From the IMG/VR virus record IMGVR_UViG_3300046694_000296, positions 1 to 64,000 of that record: 64,000 bases of DNA. One strand, written 5' to 3'. Made by a program: the position numbers and the translations under genes. Positions within the stretch are counted from its first letter, which is position 1, and the number at the start of each line of letters is the position of its first letter. This document shows positions 25,801 through 43,954 of the stretch, in pieces. The notes beneath the pieces are model-generated. The model did no database searches. It was not told the DNA's origin and worked only from the letters and a program-made list of their open reading frames with translations.

Positions 25801-26550
25801 ATGGCAAAGCAACCCCGACGCGCCGAACAACAACCGCGCAATTCTAAGCGCCGCACCGAGACGATGCTGAACGAGCTCGAGATGGAGCAGAAGGTGCCGT
25901 TTCGCGCGCCGCCGCCCTTGGCGCCAAAGACCGACTCGCAACGCCGCTACATGAACGCCATCAAGCACTTCCGGCTCGTCTTCGGCACGGGGCCGGCCGG
26001 CACAGGCAAGACCTACATTGCGGGCGCCATCGCCGCACAGCGCCTCGCCGACAAGGAGATCGAGAAGATCGTGATCACCCGGCCGGCGGTTGACGCGGGC
26101 GAGAGCCTGGGTTTTCTGCCGGGAGAGCTCGAGGAGAAGTATGGCGTCTACATTCAGCCGTTTCGCGACGTGCTCGATGAGCGGCTCGGCAAGAGCTTCG
26201 TGGACTACCTGCTGCGCACCGGCCGCATCGAGGCTGCACCGCTCGCATTCATGCGCGGCCGCACCTTCAAGAATGCGCTGATCGTGCTCGACGAGGCGCA
26301 GAACACGACGCCCACGCAGATGAAGCTGTTCCTCACCCGCATCGGCGAGAACTGCACCGTGGTGGTCAACGGCGATTTGAAGCAGAAGGACATTTCCGGC
26401 CCGAGCGGCCTCGAGGATGCCCTGAAGCGCCTCTCGTTCATTCCGAGCGTCAAGGTGGTGGAGTTCGGCCGCAAGGATGTCGTCCGCAGCGGCCTGGTTC
26501 AAGAAGTGGTGGAGGCGTATGAACAAAACGAGGCACTCGCCTATACCTAA
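25801..26550 (+). CDS. phoH: PhoH-family ATPase
   Basis: GPAGTGKT, 'ITRPAV', 'LGFLPG', 'MRGRTF', 'DEAQN', 'GD..Q.D'. Confidence 0.95.
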   Translation: MAKQPRRAEQQPRNSKRRTETMLNELEMEQKVPFRAPPPLAPKTDSQRRYMNAIKHFRLVFGTGPAGTGKTYIAGAIAAQRLADKEIEKIVITRPAVDAGESLGFLPGELEEKYGVYIQPFRDVLDERLGKSFVDYLLRTGRIEAAPLAFMRGRTFKNALIVLDEAQNTTPTQMKLFLTRIGENCTVVVNGDLKQKDISGPSGLEDALKRLSFIPSVKVVEFGRKDVVRSGLVQEVVEAYEQNEALAYT

Positions 26551-26741
26551 AAGGCACGACACAGCGCAGCTTCGGCATCTAAGGCATCGTTGATCGCTTT
26601 GCAGGGCAGCGCGTCAAGCATCAAGACGCGCCGGTTCGCCGGGCGCGACCGTGCCGAGCGGCTGAGTATTAAAGGTATTGACACCAGTGTCGTTATCTAT
26701 CGTTACGGCCTTGTAGCCTCCAAACAACGAATTAGAGAAAT

Positions 26742-27302
26742 GTGATGTCACTGATACCTTGTCCCGAATGCGAAGCTGAAGTCAGCACCAATGCCGCCGC
26801 GTGTCCCAAATGCGGGAATCCTTTGGCGTTCAAAACGGCAGAGCCGCTGAAGAAAATGCCCAGTCGGCTATTTGAGGTGGTCCGTGGAGCGGTAATAATC
26901 CTCCTTGCGTTCATCGCAATTCATTTTTACGTGGAATACGCAGGCAAGCAAACGACTACGAGCGTCGAACGCGAGCCCGCCGCGCGACCTGCCGTAACAG
27001 TCACCGCGGTCAGACTGCTGCACGACTACCAGGAGAATGAAGTAGCGGCTGACGACTACTACAAAGGGCGCGGCGTGTCCGTGGACGGAATAGTCCAAGG
27101 CATTAAGAAGGATTTTAGGGACAACACGTTCATTCAACTTCGCACCGCAGAACGGTTCTCACCAGTTCACGCCTACATTAAAGCGAGCCAAGGGAAGGTC
27201 GCGGCAGACCTTGAACGAGGAGATAAGGTTCACGTCGACTGCACTGGAGCTGGAATGATTGTTGGCTCGCCGATCCTGAACAACTGCGACGTATCGCGCT
27301 AA
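26742..27302 (+). CDS. Accessory membrane protein: zinc ribbon - TM - OB-fold-like domain
   Basis: CPEC..CPKCG ribbon, one TM, 'Y.ENEVAAD..YKG..V.V.G.V' OB-like motif; more AT-rich codon usage. Confidence 0.7.
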   Translation: MMSLIPCPECEAEVSTNAAACPKCGNPLAFKTAEPLKKMPSRLFEVVRGAVIILLAFIAIHFYVEYAGKQTTTSVEREPAARPAVTVTAVRLLHDYQENEVAADDYYKGRGVSVDGIVQGIKKDFRDNTFIQLRTAERFSPVHAYIKASQGKVAADLERGDKVHVDCTGAGMIVGSPILNNCDVSR

Positions 27303-27358
27303 ACCACTTCAGGCACCGAACCCTCCCCGGGCCGCGTGATCTTGTAGGAAGGAGGGGA

Positions 27359-27481
27359 GTGGAACACTTGGGGCTCGGAAGCGCGTCCCTCTATATCTAT
27401 CCCATTTTCAATTCTTTCTATACTGATAAGTAGAAGCTTATTTTAATTTAGGGAACCGCGAGGAAGCCCCAAGTGATCCAC
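27359..27481 (+). promoter_or_regulatory. Long inverted repeat enclosing an AT-rich loop with TATACT; 3' arm covers the GTG start of ORF 27473
   Basis: GTGGAACACTTGGGGCT (27359-27375) / AGCCCCAAGTGATCCAC (27465-27481), 16 of 17 paired; inner CGCG and TCCCT/AGGGA pairs. Confidence 0.6.
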
Positions 27482-28174
27482 CACACCACGTTTTACGGCA
27501 AAGAACTGACGGTCGCGGACTGCGAAATCCTCGCGCTGACCCGCGTCGATCCCTCGCTGCGGGCGGCCGAGAGCCTGCTTTTCGGCCGCAAGTGGTTCGA
27601 CTACCGCGTCTTCCACCCCGTGCAAGCCACCTATCTCTTCGCCCACGAATACGCGGAAAGCACCAAGCGCGCATACGCCCGCCAAAAAGACATTCGCACA
27701 GTCGCGGGCGTGCAGGGGTTCGATGTCGAAAAGCTTTTCGAGAACCGCGAACTCTCCGCGATGTGGCGGGCACGTCAATCCTTTGATGCGATCGGCTGCC
27801 GCTACGACTTCGCCATCGACTTCATCATGAGGCGATTCTGTGAGCGCGGCTGGAGAGTGTGCCCCCGGCCCAACCAGCTCTACGCGGAGGAGGTCGTGCT
27901 CGACGTGCGCGACGCCTGGCAGCGCGAGTGCAAGGCAAAGATGCAGATCGCCAAGCAAGAGCGGTTCGATGCGCGCCGCTACACCGGCCACCCCGACCAG
28001 AAAGCCTACCAGGCGTGGCAAGTCGATCAGGTCAAAACCCGCGGCGGCAACCGAGCCATGCTGCTCGGACGACTGCTGCAGGAGAACGTGCTCGCCGAAG
28101 CGGTAGTGAGCGCGGCATTCGGCGAGGCGACCCTCTTACAAGCACGCAAGTTCGTTGTCTCATCCAATAAGTAA
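27473..28174 (+). CDS. Conserved phage protein heading the replication cluster
   Basis: 233 aa, phage-like codon usage, AGGA RBS; function not recognised. Confidence 0.7.
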   Translation: MIHHTTFYGKELTVADCEILALTRVDPSLRAAESLLFGRKWFDYRVFHPVQATYLFAHEYAESTKRAYARQKDIRTVAGVQGFDVEKLFENRELSAMWRARQSFDAIGCRYDFAIDFIMRRFCERGWRVCPRPNQLYAEEVVLDVRDAWQRECKAKMQIAKQERFDARRYTGHPDQKAYQAWQVDQVKTRGGNRAMLLGRLLQENVLAEAVVSAAFGEATLLQARKFVVSSNK

Positions 28175-28236
28175 TTCGTTACTATACTGGTGAGCAGACG
28201 ACCTAACGTCTCATTCAATTCAACCCGGAGTTTCAC

Positions 28237-28689
28237 ATGAGCCTTACCCCCGAACAAGCCCGCGCCGAACAAGTCGCATATGGCCGCTCGACGCTGCGCG
28301 CCAACCCCGACTACCCGCGTCGCATTCAGCAACCCGCACGCGAAGGTTACGGCTCGCGCCCGCCGCTCGCACGCAAGCCGAACACCGGTGGTCACGACGT
28401 GATCCTGAAGGCGATGCAAGAGGGCGGCCAGAAGGCGACGATTATCACGCAGGGCGACGGCGTTGCGTTCGAAGGCGTCATCACGGGTCGCGACAAATAC
28501 ACGATCACGCTCAAGACGGCGCACCCGGACAAAGAGCGTGCGGCTGCGGGCGAGACGGTTCGCCGTGTGTTCTACAAAAGCGCCATCGAGCAGTTCTGGG
28601 GCGAAGAGGTCCGTCGCAACATTCACGACACCGAGCGCGACGAAGAAGGCTTCCGGTCGCTCGCTGAAATGACCAAGGCGGTGAACTGA
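28237..28689 (+). CDS. Hfq/Sm-like RNA-binding protein
   Basis: HDVILKAM (cf. QDPFLNAL), DGVAFEGVITGRDKYTITL (Sm1), VFYKSAI (cf. MVYKHAI, Sm2). Confidence 0.72.
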   Translation: MSLTPEQARAEQVAYGRSTLRANPDYPRRIQQPAREGYGSRPPLARKPNTGGHDVILKAMQEGGQKATIITQGDGVAFEGVITGRDKYTITLKTAHPDKERAAAGETVRRVFYKSAIEQFWGEEVRRNIHDTERDEEGFRSLAEMTKAVN

Positions 28690-37968: not shown

Positions 37969-38712
37969 TCAAAGCGGCAGCGTGCCTTGGGGATTGCGCC
38001 GGAATTCGAACCGAATGTCCGTCACCTTGCGCCCCTCCTTAATCGGCGACCACGTAATGTCCCATCCGTCTTTCTCCTGCAACTCCTTCACGGCGACCTC
38101 GATGATCTGCTTGCGAGCGTCCTTGAAGTTCTGCAGATGGCTCGGCTTCGCGTCCATCGCGTGCAGGAAGTCCTTGATGGGCATCTGACGCCAGCCGGTG
38201 TCTTTGAACTGCATGAGGAGCTCGAGCAGCCGCCACGAGTAGATCGAGCGAAGCTCCGACGCCTGGCGCAAGAGATAGGTCGTGTGGTTGCCTCGCAGCA
38301 CCATCAGATACGGCGTCGCTTCCGGCGAGAAGCGCAGCTCCACCCACCCTGCCCTGTCCACGTAAGTCGCCCCGCTCACCCACCGATCCTTGTGGGCCGC
38401 GATCGCACCGCGCTGCACCGGCTCGGTCCAGGTGATCCATCGCTCCGCGAGCCCCTCGACGCCGGACTTCAGTTGCTCGTAGGCGGTCGTGGGATCGAGA
38501 TTGAATGTCTCGGCGTATTCCTTCGCTGTCAGTCGCACCTTGTAGCGGTTGTGACTGTCAAGGCGCACACTGTCGATCTTCGCGGCGCACGACTTGACGA
38601 TGCGCTGCTCGGCAAGCGTCTTGAGCCCATGCGAGGCGACCAGGAGGTCGTTGTGCATGGAGACGTGTCGATCAACGAGACTCAGCCCAGGAGTGGCGTG
38701 CTTGAGCTTCAT
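37969..38712 (-). CDS. Plasmid replication initiator (Rep_3/RepB family)
   Basis: 'NDLL.AS..L.L.EQR', 'W V....Y....G.V.L.FS....PYL', 'L.S.YS.RL.ELL.QF', 'GRKV....F.F'. Confidence 0.92.
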   Translation of the reverse strand: MKLKHATPGLSLVDRHVSMHNDLLVASHGLKTLAEQRIVKSCAAKIDSVRLDSHNRYKVRLTAKEYAETFNLDPTTAYEQLKSGVEGLAERWITWTEPVQRGAIAAHKDRWVSGATYVDRAGWVELRFSPEATPYLMVLRGNHTTYLLRQASELRSIYSWRLLELLMQFKDTGWRQMPIKDFLHAMDAKPSHLQNFKDARKQIIEVAVKELQEKDGWDITWSPIKEGRKVTDIRFEFRRNPQGTLPL

Positions 38713-39137
38713 TGGGAGGAATTCCGGTTTCGCGGGAGCGGCTTATTGGGAGTGATCGGATTTTGCACCCCCTTTTCTCCTTTGTCACTGGGAGGATTTC
38801 CGATTCAATGGGAGGAAAACCGGGTTACTGGGAGGATTTCCGGGTCCGGGAGCCTGTGCATAACCCTACTTCGACCGGCTTTTCTCCCAATGCGTGACCG
38901 GTCGCCCTCCTACTTTGACCGGTCGCCCACCCATTTAACCCGGAATCTCTCCCATTACCTGCCTGCAAACCCATGCTGGGTAAGGCTTTGAGCCGTATAC
39001 AAACGTTTAAGAACGTATACAAACCACGCGCGAGTAGGCTGTGAACAACTTCTCGCATCTCTTTGATTACCCGGGATTCCTCCCAATCCAAATATCCCGG
39101 GAATCCTCCCAATTCGCGTAACCCGGAAATTCTCCCA
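38713..39137. repeat. Iteron array / plasmid origin, consensus TGGGAGGAWTTCCGGG
   Basis: Plus copies at 38713, 38789, 38809, 38829; inverted copies at 38875, 38939, 39070, 39096, 39122; degenerate near 38747, 38898, 38919; DnaA-like boxes at 38855-38863 and 39040-39048. Confidence 0.88.
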
Positions 39138-39175
39138 ATAGGACAAGTCCTAAAAGGCAGTCTGCAAAGGGGTGG

Positions 39176-39547
39176 TCAGTCCATGCCCAGGCGCTTCTTC
39201 TCGCGCGCGACTTCCTTGGCTACCGCCTCGGCGATGAAGTCGTTCTTGGTCTTGCCGAGCGCGAAGCAGAGCAGGTTCAAATCCTCCTTCAGCGCTGGCG
39301 GGATGCGAACCGGCTGCTGCACCGGCGTCTCCTTCTTCGGCAGCGCCGCGCGGATGGCCTGCAGATCCACACCTTTACCCACGCGAACCGGCGCCCTCCT
39401 CTCTGCAACGACCACCGGCTCAGGTGCTTGGTCCTCTATCTCCCCCGCCTGAGCTGCGGGCGCCGGCTCATCAATGGCCGCCGTCTCTGCATTCAGGCTG
39501 TCGAGCCACGCTTTGCTTTTCGGTGCGCTCATCGGGTCTTTGCTCAT
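39176..39547 (-). CDS. Partition adaptor, ParG-like ribbon-helix-helix protein
   Basis: Disordered N-terminus plus 'QQPVRIPPALKEDL......GKTKNDFIAEAV' RHH; downstream of parA. Confidence 0.75.
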   Translation of the reverse strand: MSKDPMSAPKSKAWLDSLNAETAAIDEPAPAAQAGEIEDQAPEPVVVAERRAPVRVGKGVDLQAIRAALPKKETPVQQPVRIPPALKEDLNLLCFALGKTKNDFIAEAVAKEVAREKKRLGMD

Positions 39548-40200
39548 GAAAACACTCCAAGGTAAAGGTCTTTCATTTCGTTGGCAGCGGCACTATCCCA
39601 ATCCCGGCCCGAGAGCTCGGACACCGCCCTCCCCTGCGCATTGGCGAACTTGTAGGTTTCACGCGTCGCGACCAGCTTCGTCAGGACCGGCAGCTTGTCC
39701 TCGAACGGCTCCAACTGTTTGATCATCGACTTGGTGAAGCGCTTGCGCGGATCGGCCTGATTGAGCACCACGCGAATGTCGATCTGGCGTTTGTAGCTGC
39801 CGACCAGTGCGTGTAGATCGGGCACCGTGTCGAGGTCCATCTGCGACGGGATCAGCGGCGCGAGCACCTTCTCAGCGACGGCCAGGCCGTAGCGGAAGCC
39901 GTCCGAGTCCTTGCCGCCGACGTCGATGAAAACGTCCTGATACTGATCGGTGAGACGATCGAGCACCTCGGCGAATTCCTGCTTCGTGATCGGCTTGCGC
40001 GGTTCCCACCGCTCGACATGGACCTGCGGAAGAGCCGGGTCGTTAGCGCGGCGTGCCGCCCACTTCGCGGTGCTGTTTTGTCCGTCGAGGTCGAATACGG
40101 CAACCGTGCGCTTGAGCGATGCCCGGATCGCTGCCAAATTCTGGGTGAAGGTAGATTTGCCCACGCCTCCCTTCTCTGTTCCCACCATAATTACGGCCAT
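39544..40200 (-). CDS. parA: ParA partition ATPase (type Ib)
   Basis: Deviant Walker A KGGVGKST, 'DLDGQ', 'FIDVGG'; no N-terminal HTH. Confidence 0.92.
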   Translation of the reverse strand: MAVIMVGTEKGGVGKSTFTQNLAAIRASLKRTVAVFDLDGQNSTAKWAARRANDPALPQVHVERWEPRKPITKQEFAEVLDRLTDQYQDVFIDVGGKDSDGFRYGLAVAEKVLAPLIPSQMDLDTVPDLHALVGSYKRQIDIRVVLNQADPRKRFTKSMIKQLEPFEDKLPVLTKLVATRETYKFANAQGRAVSELSGRDWDSAAANEMKDLYLGVFS

Positions 40201-40310
40201 AGAAGCCTCGATTGAATGTGTGAATTGTGCGTAGAGTAAAGGCTTGCGCCCCACACTTCAAGTAGATTATGAGCATTTGGAACTACGTCGGAGCAATGCA
40301 AGCCACTATT

Positions 40311-41577: not shown

Positions 41578-41650
41578 GCGCCAAGACGCGACCGTTAGAC
41601 TTTTGTCTATCGAATTAAAACCGTTGTTTTTTCTCAATAGGGGAATGACC

Positions 41651-43954
41651 ATGCAGGTGAACAATCGTGTCCTCGTGATGCGCGAGGCGATCACCAAAAT
41701 TGTGCCGATGTTAACTCAACGCTCAGTGCGCGTGACGCAGCAAGGCACGCAAGCATTCGTTGAATACCACGGGACCACGCTGGAGGTGAAGCGCGTCAAC
41801 CTGCCGTATATCCCCGAAGACGCCAGCGACCAACTGCTCGACGCGACGCAGGGCTTCCTCGATCACGAGGTCGGCCACGTCCTGTTCACCGAGCAGCGCT
41901 TTGTGAAAAAGGCCGCGAAGCTCAAGGTCCACTCGCTGCACAACATGGTCGAGGACACGTTCGTCGAGCGGAAGATGGGCGAGAAGTTTCCGGGCTGCGG
42001 CTCGAACCTGACGCGCATGCACGGGTTCTTCCTCACCGAATACATCGACACTCAGCTCGCCGAAAAGCCCGAGCACTCAGCCGCAATCCTGATGGTGGTT
42101 GCGATTCGTGCATGGGCGGGCCAGCCCGCCTTCGTCGACTACATGAAAGACAAGTGGGAGTTGATGAAGGACGTCGTTGACCGTCTCGGTGCCGACTTCC
42201 CGAAGATGGTCCGGGGCGTAGACAGCACCGAGCAGGCGCTCAAGGTCGCGATCGAAGCGAAGAAGCGCCTCGAACCGAAACCGCAGCCGACGCCGCCCGC
42301 GCCGCCGATGACCCCGCCGCCGGCACCGCCCGAGCCGCCGAAGTCGAGCACGCCGCCCGAAGAGCCGCAAGAACCGCAGCAGGGCGGCCAGGGTGACGGC
42401 GAGCCCGACGAGGAAAACGAGAACGACGAGCCGCAGCAGCCCAACGACATGCCGAACTTGGGCGAGCCGGAACCCGAGCAGAGCGCGCCGAGCACCCCGC
42501 AGCCGGAAGGTGACGACGAGGACGACGAACCGAAGGGTGAGGAAGAACAGGAGCCCAACGGTGAGGAGGTTCAGGAGCCGGAACCCGAGCCGACGCCCGA
42601 AGCGGGTGACGAGGAAGACGAGCCCGCACCTGCGCCGAGCAACGAAGCGGGCGATGAGTCCGACGAGGGCGAAGGTGACGACAGCGACGACGAGGATGAA
42701 AACTCGAGCGGTGGCATGTCGGGCGAGGAAGGGGAGAACGACAGCGACGCCGAAGACGAAGGTGCACCGAGCGGCGCGGGTGACGGTCTGCCCGGCGGTG
42801 AGCAGTCTGAGGACAGCGCCGAGAGTGACTCGGGCGACGCAGGTGGTGAGGACGAGAACGGGGCCGGTCAGCAGGACGCGGGCGACCAGCACGGTCACGG
42901 CACGCCGGAAGCAGGGGAGGGCGATCCGACCGGTGGGCGCGATCCGAACGACGATCGCGACTTCATGAAGGAGCTCGAGGACGCTGATATCAAGGAGTTC
43001 GACGAGGCTGCGGCCGAAGCGCTCTCGAAGCAAGCCGTCGAAGCGACCAAGGGCGCGGATTACACCGTGTTCACCCGCGATGAGGACGTGATCGGCGTGC
43101 TCGAAGTGCCGGAGGAGTTCGGGCAAGAGACGGTCACGCACATGCAATCGAAGGTGGACCACATGATCGGCCCGCTCCAGAAAGACCTGCAGCGCGCCAT
43201 TGCTGCCCGCTCGCAAGCAATCTGGACAGGTGGGCACCGGCGCGGCCAGCTGCACGGTGCCTCGCTTGCCCGCGTGCTGACCGGCCGCGAAGACGTGTTC
43301 CGCCAGAAGCAGGTGTCGCGCACGAAAGACGTCGCCGTGTCGCTGCTCGTCGATGGCTCGGGCTCGATGTGGCAGCACGGCAAGATCAAGGTGGCCTCAT
43401 ACGCCGCGTATGCGCTCTCGGCCGTGCTCGACAACATCGGCATCACCAACGAGGTGCTCGCCTTCAGCACGAACGAGTTCAGCTACGGCACGCTCAAAGC
43501 GATGAGCGAGGAGGCCAGCCAGCACCGCCTGCGTTACTCGCGGGGCGCCGCACTTGAGATCCGCATCCTCAAGTCGTTTGCTGAGCGCATGACGCCGATC
43601 GTGCGCCGTCGCTTCGCGCTGCTCTCGCAGGGTGATGCAATGATGCAAGAGAACGTCGATGGCGAGAGCGTGCAAATCGCGAACCACCGTCTCCAGCAGC
43701 AGCGCGCGACGCGCAAGGTGATGATGGTGCTCTCGGACGGGATGCCTGCGGTCAACGGGCACCGTGCCCCGATCCTCGCGAAGCACCTCAAAGAGGTCGT
43801 CAAGCAGATCGAGAAGCGCGGCACCGACGTCGTAGCGCTCGGCATTCTCGACCCGTCGGTTAAACAGTTCTACGACCGCGCGCTCGTCCTGAATTCGGTC
43901 GAGGAGCTGCCGTCGCTGGTCATGAAGGAACTTCACCGCCTCCTGGTGCAGTAA
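41651..43954 (+). CDS. CobT-like vWA protein with N-terminal HExxH domain and acidic linker
   Basis: HEVGH at 41864-41878 plus 'NMVED'; about 250-aa Pro/Asp/Glu linker; MIDAS DGSGS and 'VLSDG'. Confidence 0.85.
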   Translation: MQVNNRVLVMREAITKIVPMLTQRSVRVTQQGTQAFVEYHGTTLEVKRVNLPYIPEDASDQLLDATQGFLDHEVGHVLFTEQRFVKKAAKLKVHSLHNMVEDTFVERKMGEKFPGCGSNLTRMHGFFLTEYIDTQLAEKPEHSAAILMVVAIRAWAGQPAFVDYMKDKWELMKDVVDRLGADFPKMVRGVDSTEQALKVAIEAKKRLEPKPQPTPPAPPMTPPPAPPEPPKSSTPPEEPQEPQQGGQGDGEPDEENENDEPQQPNDMPNLGEPEPEQSAPSTPQPEGDDEDDEPKGEEEQEPNGEEVQEPEPEPTPEAGDEEDEPAPAPSNEAGDESDEGEGDDSDDEDENSSGGMSGEEGENDSDAEDEGAPSGAGDGLPGGEQSEDSAESDSGDAGGEDENGAGQQDAGDQHGHGTPEAGEGDPTGGRDPNDDRDFMKELEDADIKEFDEAAAEALSKQAVEATKGADYTVFTRDEDVIGVLEVPEEFGQETVTHMQSKVDHMIGPLQKDLQRAIAARSQAIWTGGHRRGQLHGASLARVLTGREDVFRQKQVSRTKDVAVSLLVDGSGSMWQHGKIKVASYAAYALSAVLDNIGITNEVLAFSTNEFSYGTLKAMSEEASQHRLRYSRGAALEIRILKSFAERMTPIVRRRFALLSQGDAMMQENVDGESVQIANHRLQQQRATRKVMMVLSDGMPAVNGHRAPILAKHLKEVVKQIEKRGTDVVALGILDPSVKQFYDRALVLNSVEELPSLVMKELHRLLVQ

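What the first reader, a model, noticed from the sequence alone, without database searches (positions are those of the whole stretch)
27359..27481. Long hairpin that hides the start of the first replication gene, with a promoter-like loop
Seen: a 17-bp stem (1 mismatch) plus inner pairings, enclosing a ~60-nt very AT-rich loop with TATACT at 27419. The 3' arm contains the GTG start at 27473 and flanks the AGGA RBS. Established: T4 uses such hairpins to block translation from read-through RNA while RNA from an internal promoter is translated. Inference: a safety lock stopping read-through (for example from the upstream moron) from triggering lytic replication. Alternatively it is a DNA cruciform/AT-rich lytic origin. 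It lies one gene upstream of the Hfq-like gene, a plausible remodeller.
Basis: partly seen in the sequence, partly recalled or inferred. Interest (0 to 1): 0.68.

Follow-up and report, generated by a model that had tools for sequence, protein, structure and literature searches.

The report
Hairpin masking a phage gene start
A long hairpin in a soil phage-plasmid encloses a promoter and pairs with the start codon of the next gene, so only RNA started inside the loop should be translated; this is a known phage T4 trick found here in a new setting, and it is untested at the bench.

Summary
Bases 27359-27375 pair with 27465-27481 (16 of 17), and inner pairs enclose a 59-nt loop of 24% GC in a 63% GC window. 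It is the only such inverted repeat in the 64 kb (fold z -4.2).

The GTG at 27473 is the only usable start and lies in the 3' arm. The loop's CTATACT belongs to a promoter-like family: 31 copies in the record, 25 of them intergenic.

Among close relatives, 11 of 14 variants keep both arms. One of them changed the start from GTG to ATG, with the exactly complementary change in the 5' arm about 105 nt upstream. A 42%-identity relative has the same layout built from unrelated arm sequences.

Opening the ribosome site costs 19.4 kcal/mol in read-through RNA and 8.0 in loop-started RNA. That difference is 11.4, against 1.8 +/- 1.8 at 22 control junctions.

A T4-type translational gate is therefore the best reading (about 0.5).
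- The tie to the moron: the hairpin exists without it.
- The label "replication gene": the function is unknown.
- The origin idea: a Rep3-iteron origin lies 11 kb away.
- A role for the Hfq-like gene.

A sister cassette upstream of the terminase genes has a 30-bp stem with no start codon in it, and one relative carries direct repeats of that arm. DNA-level or RNA-processing roles therefore remain open.

The parts
27359..27375 (+). Outer 5' arm GTGGAACACTTGGGGCT. Its core CACTTGGGGCT (27365-27375) is the part conserved in relatives.
   Evidence: It is kept in all close relatives and carries a compensatory change in L059.
27381..27390 (+). Inner 5' arm (GCG..TCCCT). TTCCCT is the most widely conserved pairing partner of the downstream AGGGAA.
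   Evidence: The inner stem is kept at the second cassette, in L063, in L067 and in phage nickie.
27387..27402 (+). Conserved core CCCTCTATATCTATCC, shared with the second cassette. Its role is unknown. A -10 role for CTATAT is not supported, because L045 destroys the motif.
27391..27449 (+). AT-rich loop of 59 nt at 24% GC.
27418..27432 (+). Promoter-like element CTATACT followed by the box GATAAGTA. The putative -10 is TATACT 27419-27424, and the inferred transcription start is near 27431.
   Evidence: The motif occurs 31 times in the record, 25 of them intergenic, and nearly all point at a gene 30-110 nt downstream. CTATAmT is kept before the orthologous start in distant relatives. No transcript data exist.
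27450..27459 (+). Inner 3' arm (AGGGA..CGC).
27460..27465 (+). Shine-Dalgarno GAGGAA. It lies in the internal loop of the hairpin and is not paired.
   Evidence: It is conserved in all relatives.
27465..27481 (+). Outer 3' arm AGCCCCAAGTGATCCAC. It covers the SD-start spacer, the GTG start (27473-27475) and codons 2-3.
   Evidence: The probability that the start is unpaired in read-through RNA is 0.00.
27473..28174 (+). The gated gene: 233 aa, PHROG 2500, function unknown, all-alpha, no structural relatives found.
27320..27358 (+). Terminator-like stem-loop (CCCTCC..GGAGGG) just upstream of the hairpin. It is a stronger 10-bp stem, CCTCCCCGAG/CTCGGGGAGG, in relatives L045 and L031.
26742..27302 (+). 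Upstream moron: zinc ribbon plus OB fold (tRNA_anti-like), PHROG 'Sie-like'. It is present only in the window's own lineage and is not part of the hairpin system.
28182..28689 (+). The next gene's own CTATACT promoter (28182-28188, with the upstream box ATAAGTAATTCGTTA) and the Hfq-like gene (28237-28689).
   Evidence: Pfam Hfq hits are on record for the orthologues in L062, L064 and L065.

Best explanation
The element is a promoter cassette closed by a long-range RNA helix, working as a transcript-specific translational gate of the T4 gene e / I-TevI kind.

RNA that enters from upstream carries both arms. Such RNA comes from the lysis-PhoH end of the late operon, or from whatever gene has been inserted there. 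The 5' arm (27359-27390) then pairs with 27450-27481 and buries the GTG start of the 233-aa gene. RNA that starts at the CTATACT promoter-like element inside the loop (start near 27431) lacks the 5' arm, so its ribosome site is open.

What is shown: the helix, its conservation and compensation, the promoter-motif family, and the energy difference. What is inferred: that CTATACT is an active promoter, that read-through RNA exists, and that translation is actually blocked.

The same helix would also be a plausible RNase III substrate. It is one of two sister cassettes that stand at the two ends of the late operon, so insulation from read-through may be the more general role.
For: 1. The helix is real and unique in the window.

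2. In the window's clade (65-100% protein identity), 11 of 14 distinct variants keep both arms.

3. In L059, from a cultured Paraburkholderia, the start changed from GTG to ATG (3' arm AGCCCCACATG). The 5' arm about 105 nt upstream became CATGTGGGGCT. That is two adjacent compensatory pairs that include the start codon.

4. Pair counts on unfitted MAFFT alignments:
- Type 1 alone: 81% of cells paired against 32-49% with slid partners, and 6 double-change cells (0 of 500 shuffles reach this).
- Both cassette types together: 77% against 34-48%, and 15 of 29 pairs with changes on both sides.

5. L063 (42% identity) has unrelated arms (TTAGGAAG/CTTCCTAA, inner CGGTTTCCTAT/ATAGGAAACCG) but the same layout: ATG in the outer stem, SD in the internal loop, and a -10-like motif in the AT-rich loop (z -6.2). 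L066 (46%) pairs TGGGCGTCC with GGATGCCCA over its ATG. L067 buries its SD.

6. Opening energy of positions -15..+12 is 19.4 kcal/mol in read-through RNA and 8.0 in loop-started RNA. The difference is 11.4, against 1.8 +/- 1.8 (maximum 5.3) at the other 22 CTATACT promoter-gene junctions. It is 9.5-12.9 in L008, L044, L059, L060 and L063.

7. CTATACT is a strongly intergenic, gene-directed motif (25 of 31 copies lie in the 13% of the DNA that is intergenic). CTATAmT is kept 45-61 nt before the orthologous start in most relatives from 39% identity up.

8. The mechanism has a documented precedent (PMC3014915).
Against: - No transcript data exist. Only DNA metagenomes hold the sequence.
- One sub-clade (B, L007) lost the 3' arm and L068 replaced the cassette, so the gate is dispensable.
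- L043 and L069 carry the arms, but the ensemble calculation gives a difference near 0, because a local hairpin around the 5' arm competes.
- The sister cassette has an even better stem of about 30 bp with no start codon in it. In phage nickie the analogous stem ends about 80 nt before the start. Start-codon masking therefore cannot be the only reason for such stems.
- The outer arm sequences are far more conserved than pure pairing would require. In G003 the type-2 arm occurs as three direct copies with no inverted partner.
- Non-Watson-Crick pairs show no strand bias: 19 G.T against 24 A.C.
- Palindrome-templated mutation could mimic compensation.
- Only the first gene of the cluster would be gated.
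Confidence: 0.5

Rival explanations
1. A DNA-level element. The two arms are inverted copies of a binding site for a phage or host protein, for example the prophage repressor. The sites bracket the promoter and repress it by looping or occlusion, and the overlap with the start codon is incidental.
For: - The phage is temperate, a plasmid prophage with Rep3, iterons and ParA, so its lytic promoters need repression.
- The outer arms are nearly invariant within each locus over 65-100% relatives.
- The 5' arm is kept intact where the 3' arm is lost.
- G003 has three direct copies of TTACTTGTCACTTTT about 80 nt apart and no inverted copy.
- Mismatch types show no strand bias.
Against: - The compensatory change in L059 runs through the start codon.
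- L063 and L066 rebuild a stem over the start codon from unrelated sequences, which a binding-site model does not predict.
- The inner arms change quickly yet stay complementary.
- The motifs occur nowhere else in four genomes.
- Type 1 and type 2 arms share only CACTTG..CT.
Confidence: 0.2
2. RNA-level, but not a translational gate. The stem acts as an insulator or processing site at a module boundary, either as an RNase III target or as an attenuator for read-through RNA. This would make it a PeSL-like promoter-plus-stem-loop cassette, with the start codon in the arm only because the region is compact.
For: - The sister cassette upstream of terS/terL has 28-30 paired bases and no start codon.
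- Phage nickie has a 22-bp stem around an AT-rich core right after PhoH.
- The two cassettes stand at the two ends of the late operon.
- The site just upstream is an insertion hot spot: a moron here, GIY-YIG in L059, other genes in L060 and L068. PeSLs behave the same way (PMC2839356).
Against: - No U-tract follows the stem.
- The start-codon pairing is compensated in L059 and re-created in L063 and L066.
- The opening-energy difference is an outlier specific to this junction.
- The two roles are not exclusive.
Confidence: 0.15
3. A degenerate MITE-like or duplicated relic with no present function.
For: The element is about 120 bp with 25-30 bp terminal inverted repeats and an AT-rich core, as in Correia-type elements (PMC2649163). 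There are two diverged copies per genome.
Against: - Both copies are syntenic in all relatives and are not dispersed.
- No target-site duplication is seen.
- The arms are conserved and compensated over 65-100% relatives, while the loop interior diverges.
Confidence: 0.05
4. An AT-rich lytic replication origin or DNA cruciform.
For: It has an AT-rich core flanked by an inverted repeat and stands before the DnaB-primase cluster.
Against: - There are no iterons or repeated boxes in or around it.
- A Rep3 initiator with at least 8 iterons lies at 38.0-39.1 kb. That is the plasmid-mode origin, so a separate lytic origin is not excluded.
- The sister copy sits before the terminase genes.
- A 59-nt spacer disfavours cruciform extrusion (general knowledge).
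Confidence: 0.04
5. An invertible promoter (inverton) flipped by a recombinase.
For: Inverted repeats flank a promoter-like core.
Against: - Every variant retrieved has the same orientation.
- Contigs from four samples show no strand-switch joints (contigs only, so rare forms could be missed).
- The invertible segment would be only about 60-90 bp.
- The 3' arm is coding.
- No recombinase gene is adjacent.
Confidence: 0.01

Closest known systems
T4-type inhibitory hairpins at translation initiation regions (genes e, soc, 49, I-TevI; Aeh1 mobE)
   Same: The start codon is sequestered in a helix in long transcripts. A promoter lies so that its own transcripts lack the 5' strand and are translated (PMC3014915). 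Here the start is paired, a promoter-like motif lies inside the loop, and the opening-energy difference is about 11 kcal/mol.
   Different: - The host phage is a temperate phage-plasmid of Burkholderia-type hosts, not a T4-like myovirus.
- The pairing is long-range, about 105 nt, and encloses the whole promoter region instead of a compact hairpin.
- The SD is left in an internal loop.
- The promoter is a CTATAmT type with no recognisable -35, not the T4 late TATAAATA.
- There is no experimental evidence here.
PeSLs (promoter-early stem-loop cassettes) of T4-type phages
   Same: It is a composite conserved cassette of about 100 bp, combining a promoter with a stem-loop in an intergenic region. 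It ends in the SD and start of the next gene and sits beside gene insertions and replacements between close relatives (PMC2839356; compare).
   Different: PeSLs number about 50 per genome, carry consensus sigma-70 promoters and have short G/C-rich stems that terminate transcription. Here there are two copies per genome, the promoter has no clear -35, and a 25-30 bp stem spans the entire promoter with no U-tract.
Correia repeat-enclosed elements / bacterial MITEs
   Same: These are elements of about 100-155 bp with inverted repeats of about 26 bp around a conserved core. They can supply promoters, and they form RNA hairpins bound or cut by RNase III when co-transcribed (PMC2649163).
   Different: The element here is not dispersed or multicopy, shows no target duplication, and has both copies at fixed syntenic sites.
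Lambda PR'-tR' late leader (comparison for the sister cassette only)
   Same: A promoter-like region is followed by a short non-coding stretch and a strong intrinsic terminator directly before the packaging and late genes. The lambda layout is from my own knowledge.
   Different: No Q-like protein has been identified, and the inverted repeat has no lambda counterpart. This comparison was not tested.

Membership tests
T4-type transcript-specific translational lock | The SD and/or start codon is held in an RNA helix in transcripts that come from upstream. | tested here: met
   In silico only. The start is unpaired with probability 0.00, and the opening energy is 19.4 kcal/mol in RNA starting at 27300. 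Compensation occurs in L059.
T4-type transcript-specific translational lock | A promoter is placed so that its transcripts lack the 5' strand of the helix. | tested here: inconclusive
   CTATACT at 27418 lies inside the loop and belongs to a 31-copy motif family that is 81% intergenic. It is conserved in relatives. No transcription start data exist.
T4-type transcript-specific translational lock | Translation differs between the two transcript classes. | not testable with these tools
   This needs reporter fusions or toeprinting. Only the energy difference could be computed: 11.4 against 1.8 +/- 1.8 in controls.
PeSL cassettes | A sigma-70 consensus promoter joined to a terminator stem-loop. 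| tested here: not met
   No consensus promoter is found in 26500-28500 apart from a weak site at 26872. The -35-like TTG in the 5' arm is lost in L059. No U-tract follows the stem.
PeSL cassettes | Many copies per genome, clustered in hyperplastic regions. | tested here: not met
   There are two cassettes per genome of about 108 kb.
PeSL cassettes | Association with insertion and replacement of genes between close relatives. | tested here: met
   The window has a moron here, and homology with half B resumes exactly at 27361. L059 has a GIY-YIG gene at this site, and L060 and L068 have other genes.
MITE / Correia-like element | Terminal inverted repeats around a short core. | tested here: met
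MITE / Correia-like element | Dispersed multicopy distribution with target-site duplication. | tested here: not met
   The arm motif occurs only at its own locus in four genomes. The flanks show no direct duplication.
Invertible promoter (inverton) | Both orientations are found in populations, and a recombinase is nearby. | tested here: not met
   One orientation is seen in all variants, and contigs of four samples show no joints. The neighbours are PhoH, the moron and PHROG 2500. Only contigs were available, so rare forms could be missed.
Iteron-type or AT-rich replication origin | Repeated initiator sites next to an AT-rich unwinding region. | tested here: not met
   There are no repeats in the element other than its two arms. 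A true iteron array with Rep3 lies at 37969-39140.
Any Rfam RNA family | A covariance-model match at or above the gathering score. | tested here: not met
   The search covered loci L001 (holds 27359-27481) and L003 (sister cassette). All six matches fall on the sister cassette in L003: microRNA-precursor models at 20-30 bits, against cut-offs of 74-90. L001 had none at E up to 1.

The most novel reading that the evidence does not exclude
The two inverted-repeat promoter cassettes stand at the head of the replication cluster (27.4 kb) and at the head of the terminase/late operon (about 103.9 kb of the record). In this reading they form a dedicated boundary system that keeps a plasmid prophage's lytic modules silent against read-through, by double-stranded RNA formation and/or repressor looping. 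The gated protein, which has a conserved and confidently folded all-alpha fold with no known structural relative, would be the regulator that switches on the phage's CTATAmT promoter family.
Probability: 0.1. Interest if true: 0.75.

Novelty: new variant of a known kind. Interest (0 to 1): 0.5.

Why it matters
Phage-plasmids of the SSU5/nickie type are common in soil and clinical Proteobacteria, yet how they keep lytic modules quiet while replicating as plasmids is poorly known.

If the gate works as inferred, it shows that the T4 solution has also arisen in temperate siphovirus phage-plasmids. In that solution a gene can be translated only from its own promoter's transcript. It has arisen in at least two sequence-independent forms (three if L066's weaker stem is counted).

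It would also explain why the site just upstream tolerates the insertion of expressed cargo genes: a moron here and a homing endonuclease in a relative. In addition, it marks a conserved protein of unknown fold as worth studying, and it gives a usable promoter motif (CTATAmT with GTAAG boxes) for annotating these genomes.

Without bench data it remains a well-supported prediction and not a discovery.

Tried and rejected
- **Transcript evidence.** All 24 sequencing runs that hold the stretch are DNA from rhizosphere or soil. None is RNA, so no transcription start or processing data were available.
- **Rfam.** Nothing real was found.
- **Sigma-70 promoter with its -35 in the 5' arm** (TTGGGG/TTGTCA-N18-TATATA, first read against the rhizobial CTTGAC-N17-CTATAT consensus; papers holding both motif strings were listed but not read, so the consensus rests on my own knowledge). 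I dropped this for three reasons:
  - L059 changes the TTG together with the start codon.
  - L045 destroys CTATAT.
  - The close hosts are Burkholderia and Paraburkholderia, not rhizobia.
- **Strand asymmetry of wobble pairs** as a test of RNA against DNA. The counts were 19 G.T and 24 A.C, which is uninformative.
- **Invertible promoter.** No joints were seen in contigs of four samples, and all variants share one orientation.
- **Origin.** A Rep3-iteron origin was found elsewhere.
- **Small ORF after the sister cassette.** It is not conserved, because frame-breaking indels separate the variants.
- **Function of the gated protein.** All of these came back empty or at noise level: Pfam, PDB by sequence, Foldseek PDB, VIA wide (best Z 4.5) and both Atlas searches.
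- **Phage-collection nucleotide search.** No match.
- **Genome-collection scan for a host.** Only a 28% hit in a Nitrobacter MAG.

Full report
**1. Observation**

The sequence is as described.
- GTGGAACACTTGGGGCT (27359-27375) pairs with AGCCCCAAGTGATCCAC (27465-27481) at 16 of 17 positions.
- The inner pairs are GCG/CGC and TCCCT/AGGGA. Together the stems close a 59-nt loop of 24% GC, in a window of 62.6% GC.
- RNAfold gives -41.6 kcal/mol, z -4.16, and no shuffle out of 200 folds as well.
- A scan of the whole 64 kb for 17-nt inverted repeats (at least 16 of 17) with a 60-130 nt spacer returns this pair only.
- The start codon GTG 27473 is in the 3' arm.
- The SD GAGGAA (27460-27465) is not paired. 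It sits in a purine-rich internal loop.

**2. What the window is**

The window is the first 64 kb of a 215,656-bp virus record flagged as having terminal repeats. Self-comparison shows the record is two collinear, roughly 80%-identical genomes of about 108 kb joined head to tail and closed by a 127-bp exact repeat. Complete relatives are 105-107.5 kb. The second half therefore serves as a natural relative, here called B.

The phage carries a Rep3 initiator (37969-38712, minus strand) next to at least 8 iterons (38708-39140), plus a ParA ATPase. One relative is flagged as a provirus in an isolate genome. Close homologues of the gated gene lie on contigs of Paraburkholderia sp., Burkholderia anthina and B. 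vietnamiensis. So it is a temperate phage-plasmid. It is distantly related to Rhizobium phages such as RHEph10, to Pseudomonas phage nickie and (my own inference from the host and size pattern of the hits) to SSU5-like phage-plasmids. All sequencing runs that hold it are rhizosphere or soil DNA.

**3. Gene order and the start codon**

The order is endolysin, spanin-like, PhoH, [moron], hairpin, a 233-aa protein (PHROG 2500, unknown), an Hfq-like protein, DnaB-type helicase, primase. The order PhoH, this gene, (Hfq), DnaB is kept out to nickie, RHEph10 and Cyrano.

GTG 27473 is the first start after an in-frame TAG at 27449. SD plus start are conserved in all relatives, and conserved residues begin about 8 codons later. 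The start call is sound.

**4. The loop holds a member of a promoter-like family**

CTATACT occurs 31 times in the record. Of these, 25 lie in the 13% of the DNA that is intergenic, and almost all point at a gene start 30-110 nt downstream. There are two subtypes:
- An upstream box: GTAAGTnAnnCGTTA-CTATACT, for example at 28182 before the Hfq-like gene.
- A downstream box: CTATACT-GrTAAGTAAC, as in the hairpin loop and at 66002.

There is no recognisable -35. CTATAmT is kept 45-61 nt before the orthologous start in most relatives from 39% to 100% identity. Even the E. coli phage Cyrano carries GATAAGTAAGTAAC there. The "promoter-like loop" is therefore well founded at the motif level. No transcription start data exist.

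**5. Close relatives (65-100% protein identity)**

Eleven of 14 distinct variants keep both arms: A1, L028, L026, L016, L030, L031, L043, L044, L045/L060, L059 and L069. The exceptions are:
- B and L007, one sub-clade whose sister L016 has the hairpin. They keep the 5' arm but lack the 3' arm and do not fold (z 0 to +1.3).
- L068, which has a different upstream region.

The decisive variant is L059. Its start is ATG and its 3' arm is AGCCCCACATG. Its 5' arm is CATGTGGGGCT, an exact complement reached by two adjacent double changes (C-G to U-A and U-A to G-C).

L043 and L045 turn an A-U pair into G.U. L026 has one mismatch and L030 one bulge.

On an unfitted alignment, 81% of cells pair against 32-49% with slid partners.

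**6. The moron is irrelevant**

The hairpin is present with PhoH directly upstream in L016/L008, L026/L032, L043 and L044. It is also present behind a GIY-YIG gene in L059 and behind other genes in L060. The site just upstream is an insertion hot spot, and homology between A and B resumes exactly at 27361. A terminator-like stem-loop precedes the hairpin in all lineages.

**7. A sister cassette**

The same layout occurs once more per genome:

CACTTGnnnCT, 11 nt, CCCTCT(T)ATATATAACC, an AT-rich stretch, GGGAAmC, then the inverted arm.

It lies at record position 103,818-103,943 (L003 1318-1432) and at the equivalent place in B.
- Its stem has 28-30 pairs, with z from -5.1 to -8.6, in 10 of 11 variants.
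- Its outer arm differs from type 1 in a compensatory way: TCAC/GTGA against GGGC/GCCC.
- Further compensation is seen within type 2, namely ACTTATCAC/GTGATAAGT in L050 and inner-stem variants.
- It is followed by about 200 nt without a conserved ORF. That stretch holds a conserved TTTACA-N17-TATAGT and an invariant intrinsic terminator, and is followed by a DNA-binding (terS-like) gene and the large terminase.

No start codon lies in its arm. The two cassettes thus stand at the beginning and the end of the packaging-structure-lysis operon.

In G003, the type-2 outer arm occurs as three direct copies about 80 nt apart with no inverted copy, and nowhere else in four genomes.

**8. Energetics**

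Opening positions -15..+12 of the ribosome site costs 19.4 kcal/mol in RNA starting at 27300, and 8.0-8.2 in RNA starting inside the loop.

| Junction | Opening-energy difference (kcal/mol) |
|---|---|
| Window hairpin (27418) | 11.4 |
| Other 22 CTATACT junctions | 1.8 +/- 1.8, maximum 5.3 |
| L008, L044, L059, L060 | 9.5-12.9 |
| B (no 3' arm) | about 4 |
| L043, L069 (arms present, a local hairpin around the 5' arm competes) | about 0 |

**9. Distant relatives**

- L063 (42%) has unrelated arm sequences but the same design: ATG in the outer stem, SD in the internal loop, an inner stem, and an AT-rich loop with CTATAAG. Its z is -6.2 and its difference 12.6.
- L066 (46%) pairs TGGGCGTCC with GGATGCCCA across a loop that holds GCTATACT (z -5.2, difference 4.8).
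- L067 buries its SD in a 17-bp stem.
- L061, L062, L064, L065 and L047 have no such stem.
- Nickie has a 22-bp stem around an AT-rich core right after PhoH, but it ends about 80 nt before the start. Cyrano has a terminator-like hairpin.

A stem around the promoter at this boundary is therefore old, while its extension over the start codon is lineage-specific and recurrent.

**10. Weighing the explanations**

The points favouring an RNA-level start-codon mask are the compensation through the start codon, the re-creation of the design from unrelated sequence, and the junction-specific energy difference. This is the T4 e/soc/49/I-TevI logic (PMC3014915).

Several points show that the inverted repeat has at least one further role, or a different one, and that the gate is dispensable:
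- the sister cassette, which has no start codon in its arm;
- the nickie stem;
- the strong sequence conservation of the outer arms;
- the direct repeats in G003;
- the loss of the 3' arm in B and L007.

The candidate further roles are insulation or processing of read-through RNA, or protein binding at the DNA level. Mismatch types give no strand signal. The origin, inverton and MITE readings have little support.

**11. The gated protein**

The model is all-alpha with pLDDT 93.8. It has no Foldseek hit, a best VIA Z of 4.5, and Atlas TM scores below 0.5. Its last 45 residues weakly resemble small helix-turn-helix domains (Z 3.2-3.6), which is not significant. "First replication gene" is therefore a statement about position only.

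The Hfq-like call for the next gene is reasonable (Pfam E 0.002; all of the best named Atlas clusters are Hfq; Pfam Hfq on record for the orthologues). Nothing ties it to the hairpin.

**12. Comparison, novelty and limits**

The element works like the T4 translational locks, and its cassette character and neighbouring insertions recall PeSLs (PMC2839356). It fails the defining features of PeSLs (consensus promoter, many copies), of MITEs (dispersal, target duplication), of invertons and of origins. No Rfam family matches. I file it as a new variant of a known kind of control, in a phage-plasmid.

All functional statements are inferences from sequence. Covariation counts rest on related sequences, and palindrome-templated mutation could inflate them.

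Noticed in passing
whole record G000 (window = its first 64 kb); junctions near 108,902/108,903 and at the 127-bp end repeat: The 215.7-kb 'jumbo phage with terminal repeats' is two collinear, roughly 80%-identical genomes of about 108 kb joined head to tail, most likely an assembly chimera of two co-occurring strains. Complete relatives are 105-107.5 kb.
   Followed up: yes
window 37969-40254 (minus strand): A plasmid-maintenance module: Rep3 initiator (WH1+WH2, 37969-38712), at least 8 iterons TGGGAGGAwTTCCGG in both orientations (38708-39140), a small ORF at 39176-39547, and ParA at 39544-40254. The phage is a phage-plasmid.
   Followed up: partly
window 28182, 31532, 50682, 55728, 61009 and record 64709, 66002, 68868, 70022, 78182, 95098(-), 99283(-), with counterparts in half B: A promoter-like family CTATACT with no -35, in two subtypes: an upstream box GTAAGTnAnnCGTTA or a downstream box GrTAAGTAAC. 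None lies in the structural operon at 1-24 kb. The GTAAG box also appears in E. coli phage Cyrano.
   Followed up: partly
L003 1318-1432 (record 103,818-103,943) and L004 1338-1452: A sister inverted-repeat cassette with a stem of about 30 bp, directly upstream of the terS-like and terL genes. It is conserved in 10 of 11 variants, with compensatory changes.
   Followed up: yes
L003 1433-1615: A conserved non-coding leader of about 200 nt after the sister cassette. It has TTTACA-N17-TATAGT, a stretch like the 16S 3' end (ATCACCTCC), and an invariant intrinsic terminator just before the packaging genes. The layout is lambda PR'-tR'-like, and it could be a small RNA or an antitermination target.
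   Followed up: partly
L053 1342, 1421, 1501 (G003, provirus in an isolate genome): Three direct copies of TTACTTGTCACTTTT about 80 nt apart replace the inverted pair at the type-2 locus, which suggests the arm sequence is also a DNA-level site.
   Followed up: partly
window 26742-27302: The moron encodes a zinc ribbon plus an OB fold (tRNA_anti-like) and matches the PHROG 'superinfection exclusion Sie-like' family. Relatives lack it. The same slot holds a GIY-YIG endonuclease gene in L059 and other genes in L060 and L068, so it is an insertion hot spot.
   Followed up: partly
window 27473-28174: The 233-aa protein is conserved across this phage group and folds with pLDDT 93.8 into an all-alpha structure. 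It has no match in PDB (Foldseek, VIA) or in the Atlas.
   Followed up: yes
window 41603-43954: A large CobT-like protein with a VWA domain (Pfam CobT_C, E 3e-32), at the start of the next plus-strand block.
   Followed up: no
window 27514 onward, runs X6 and X8: Contigs of B-like and L007-like strains co-occur with the window's strain in the same rhizosphere samples. They align only from 27514 on, so the region upstream (N-terminus, hairpin 3' arm) is the strain-variable part.
   Followed up: no
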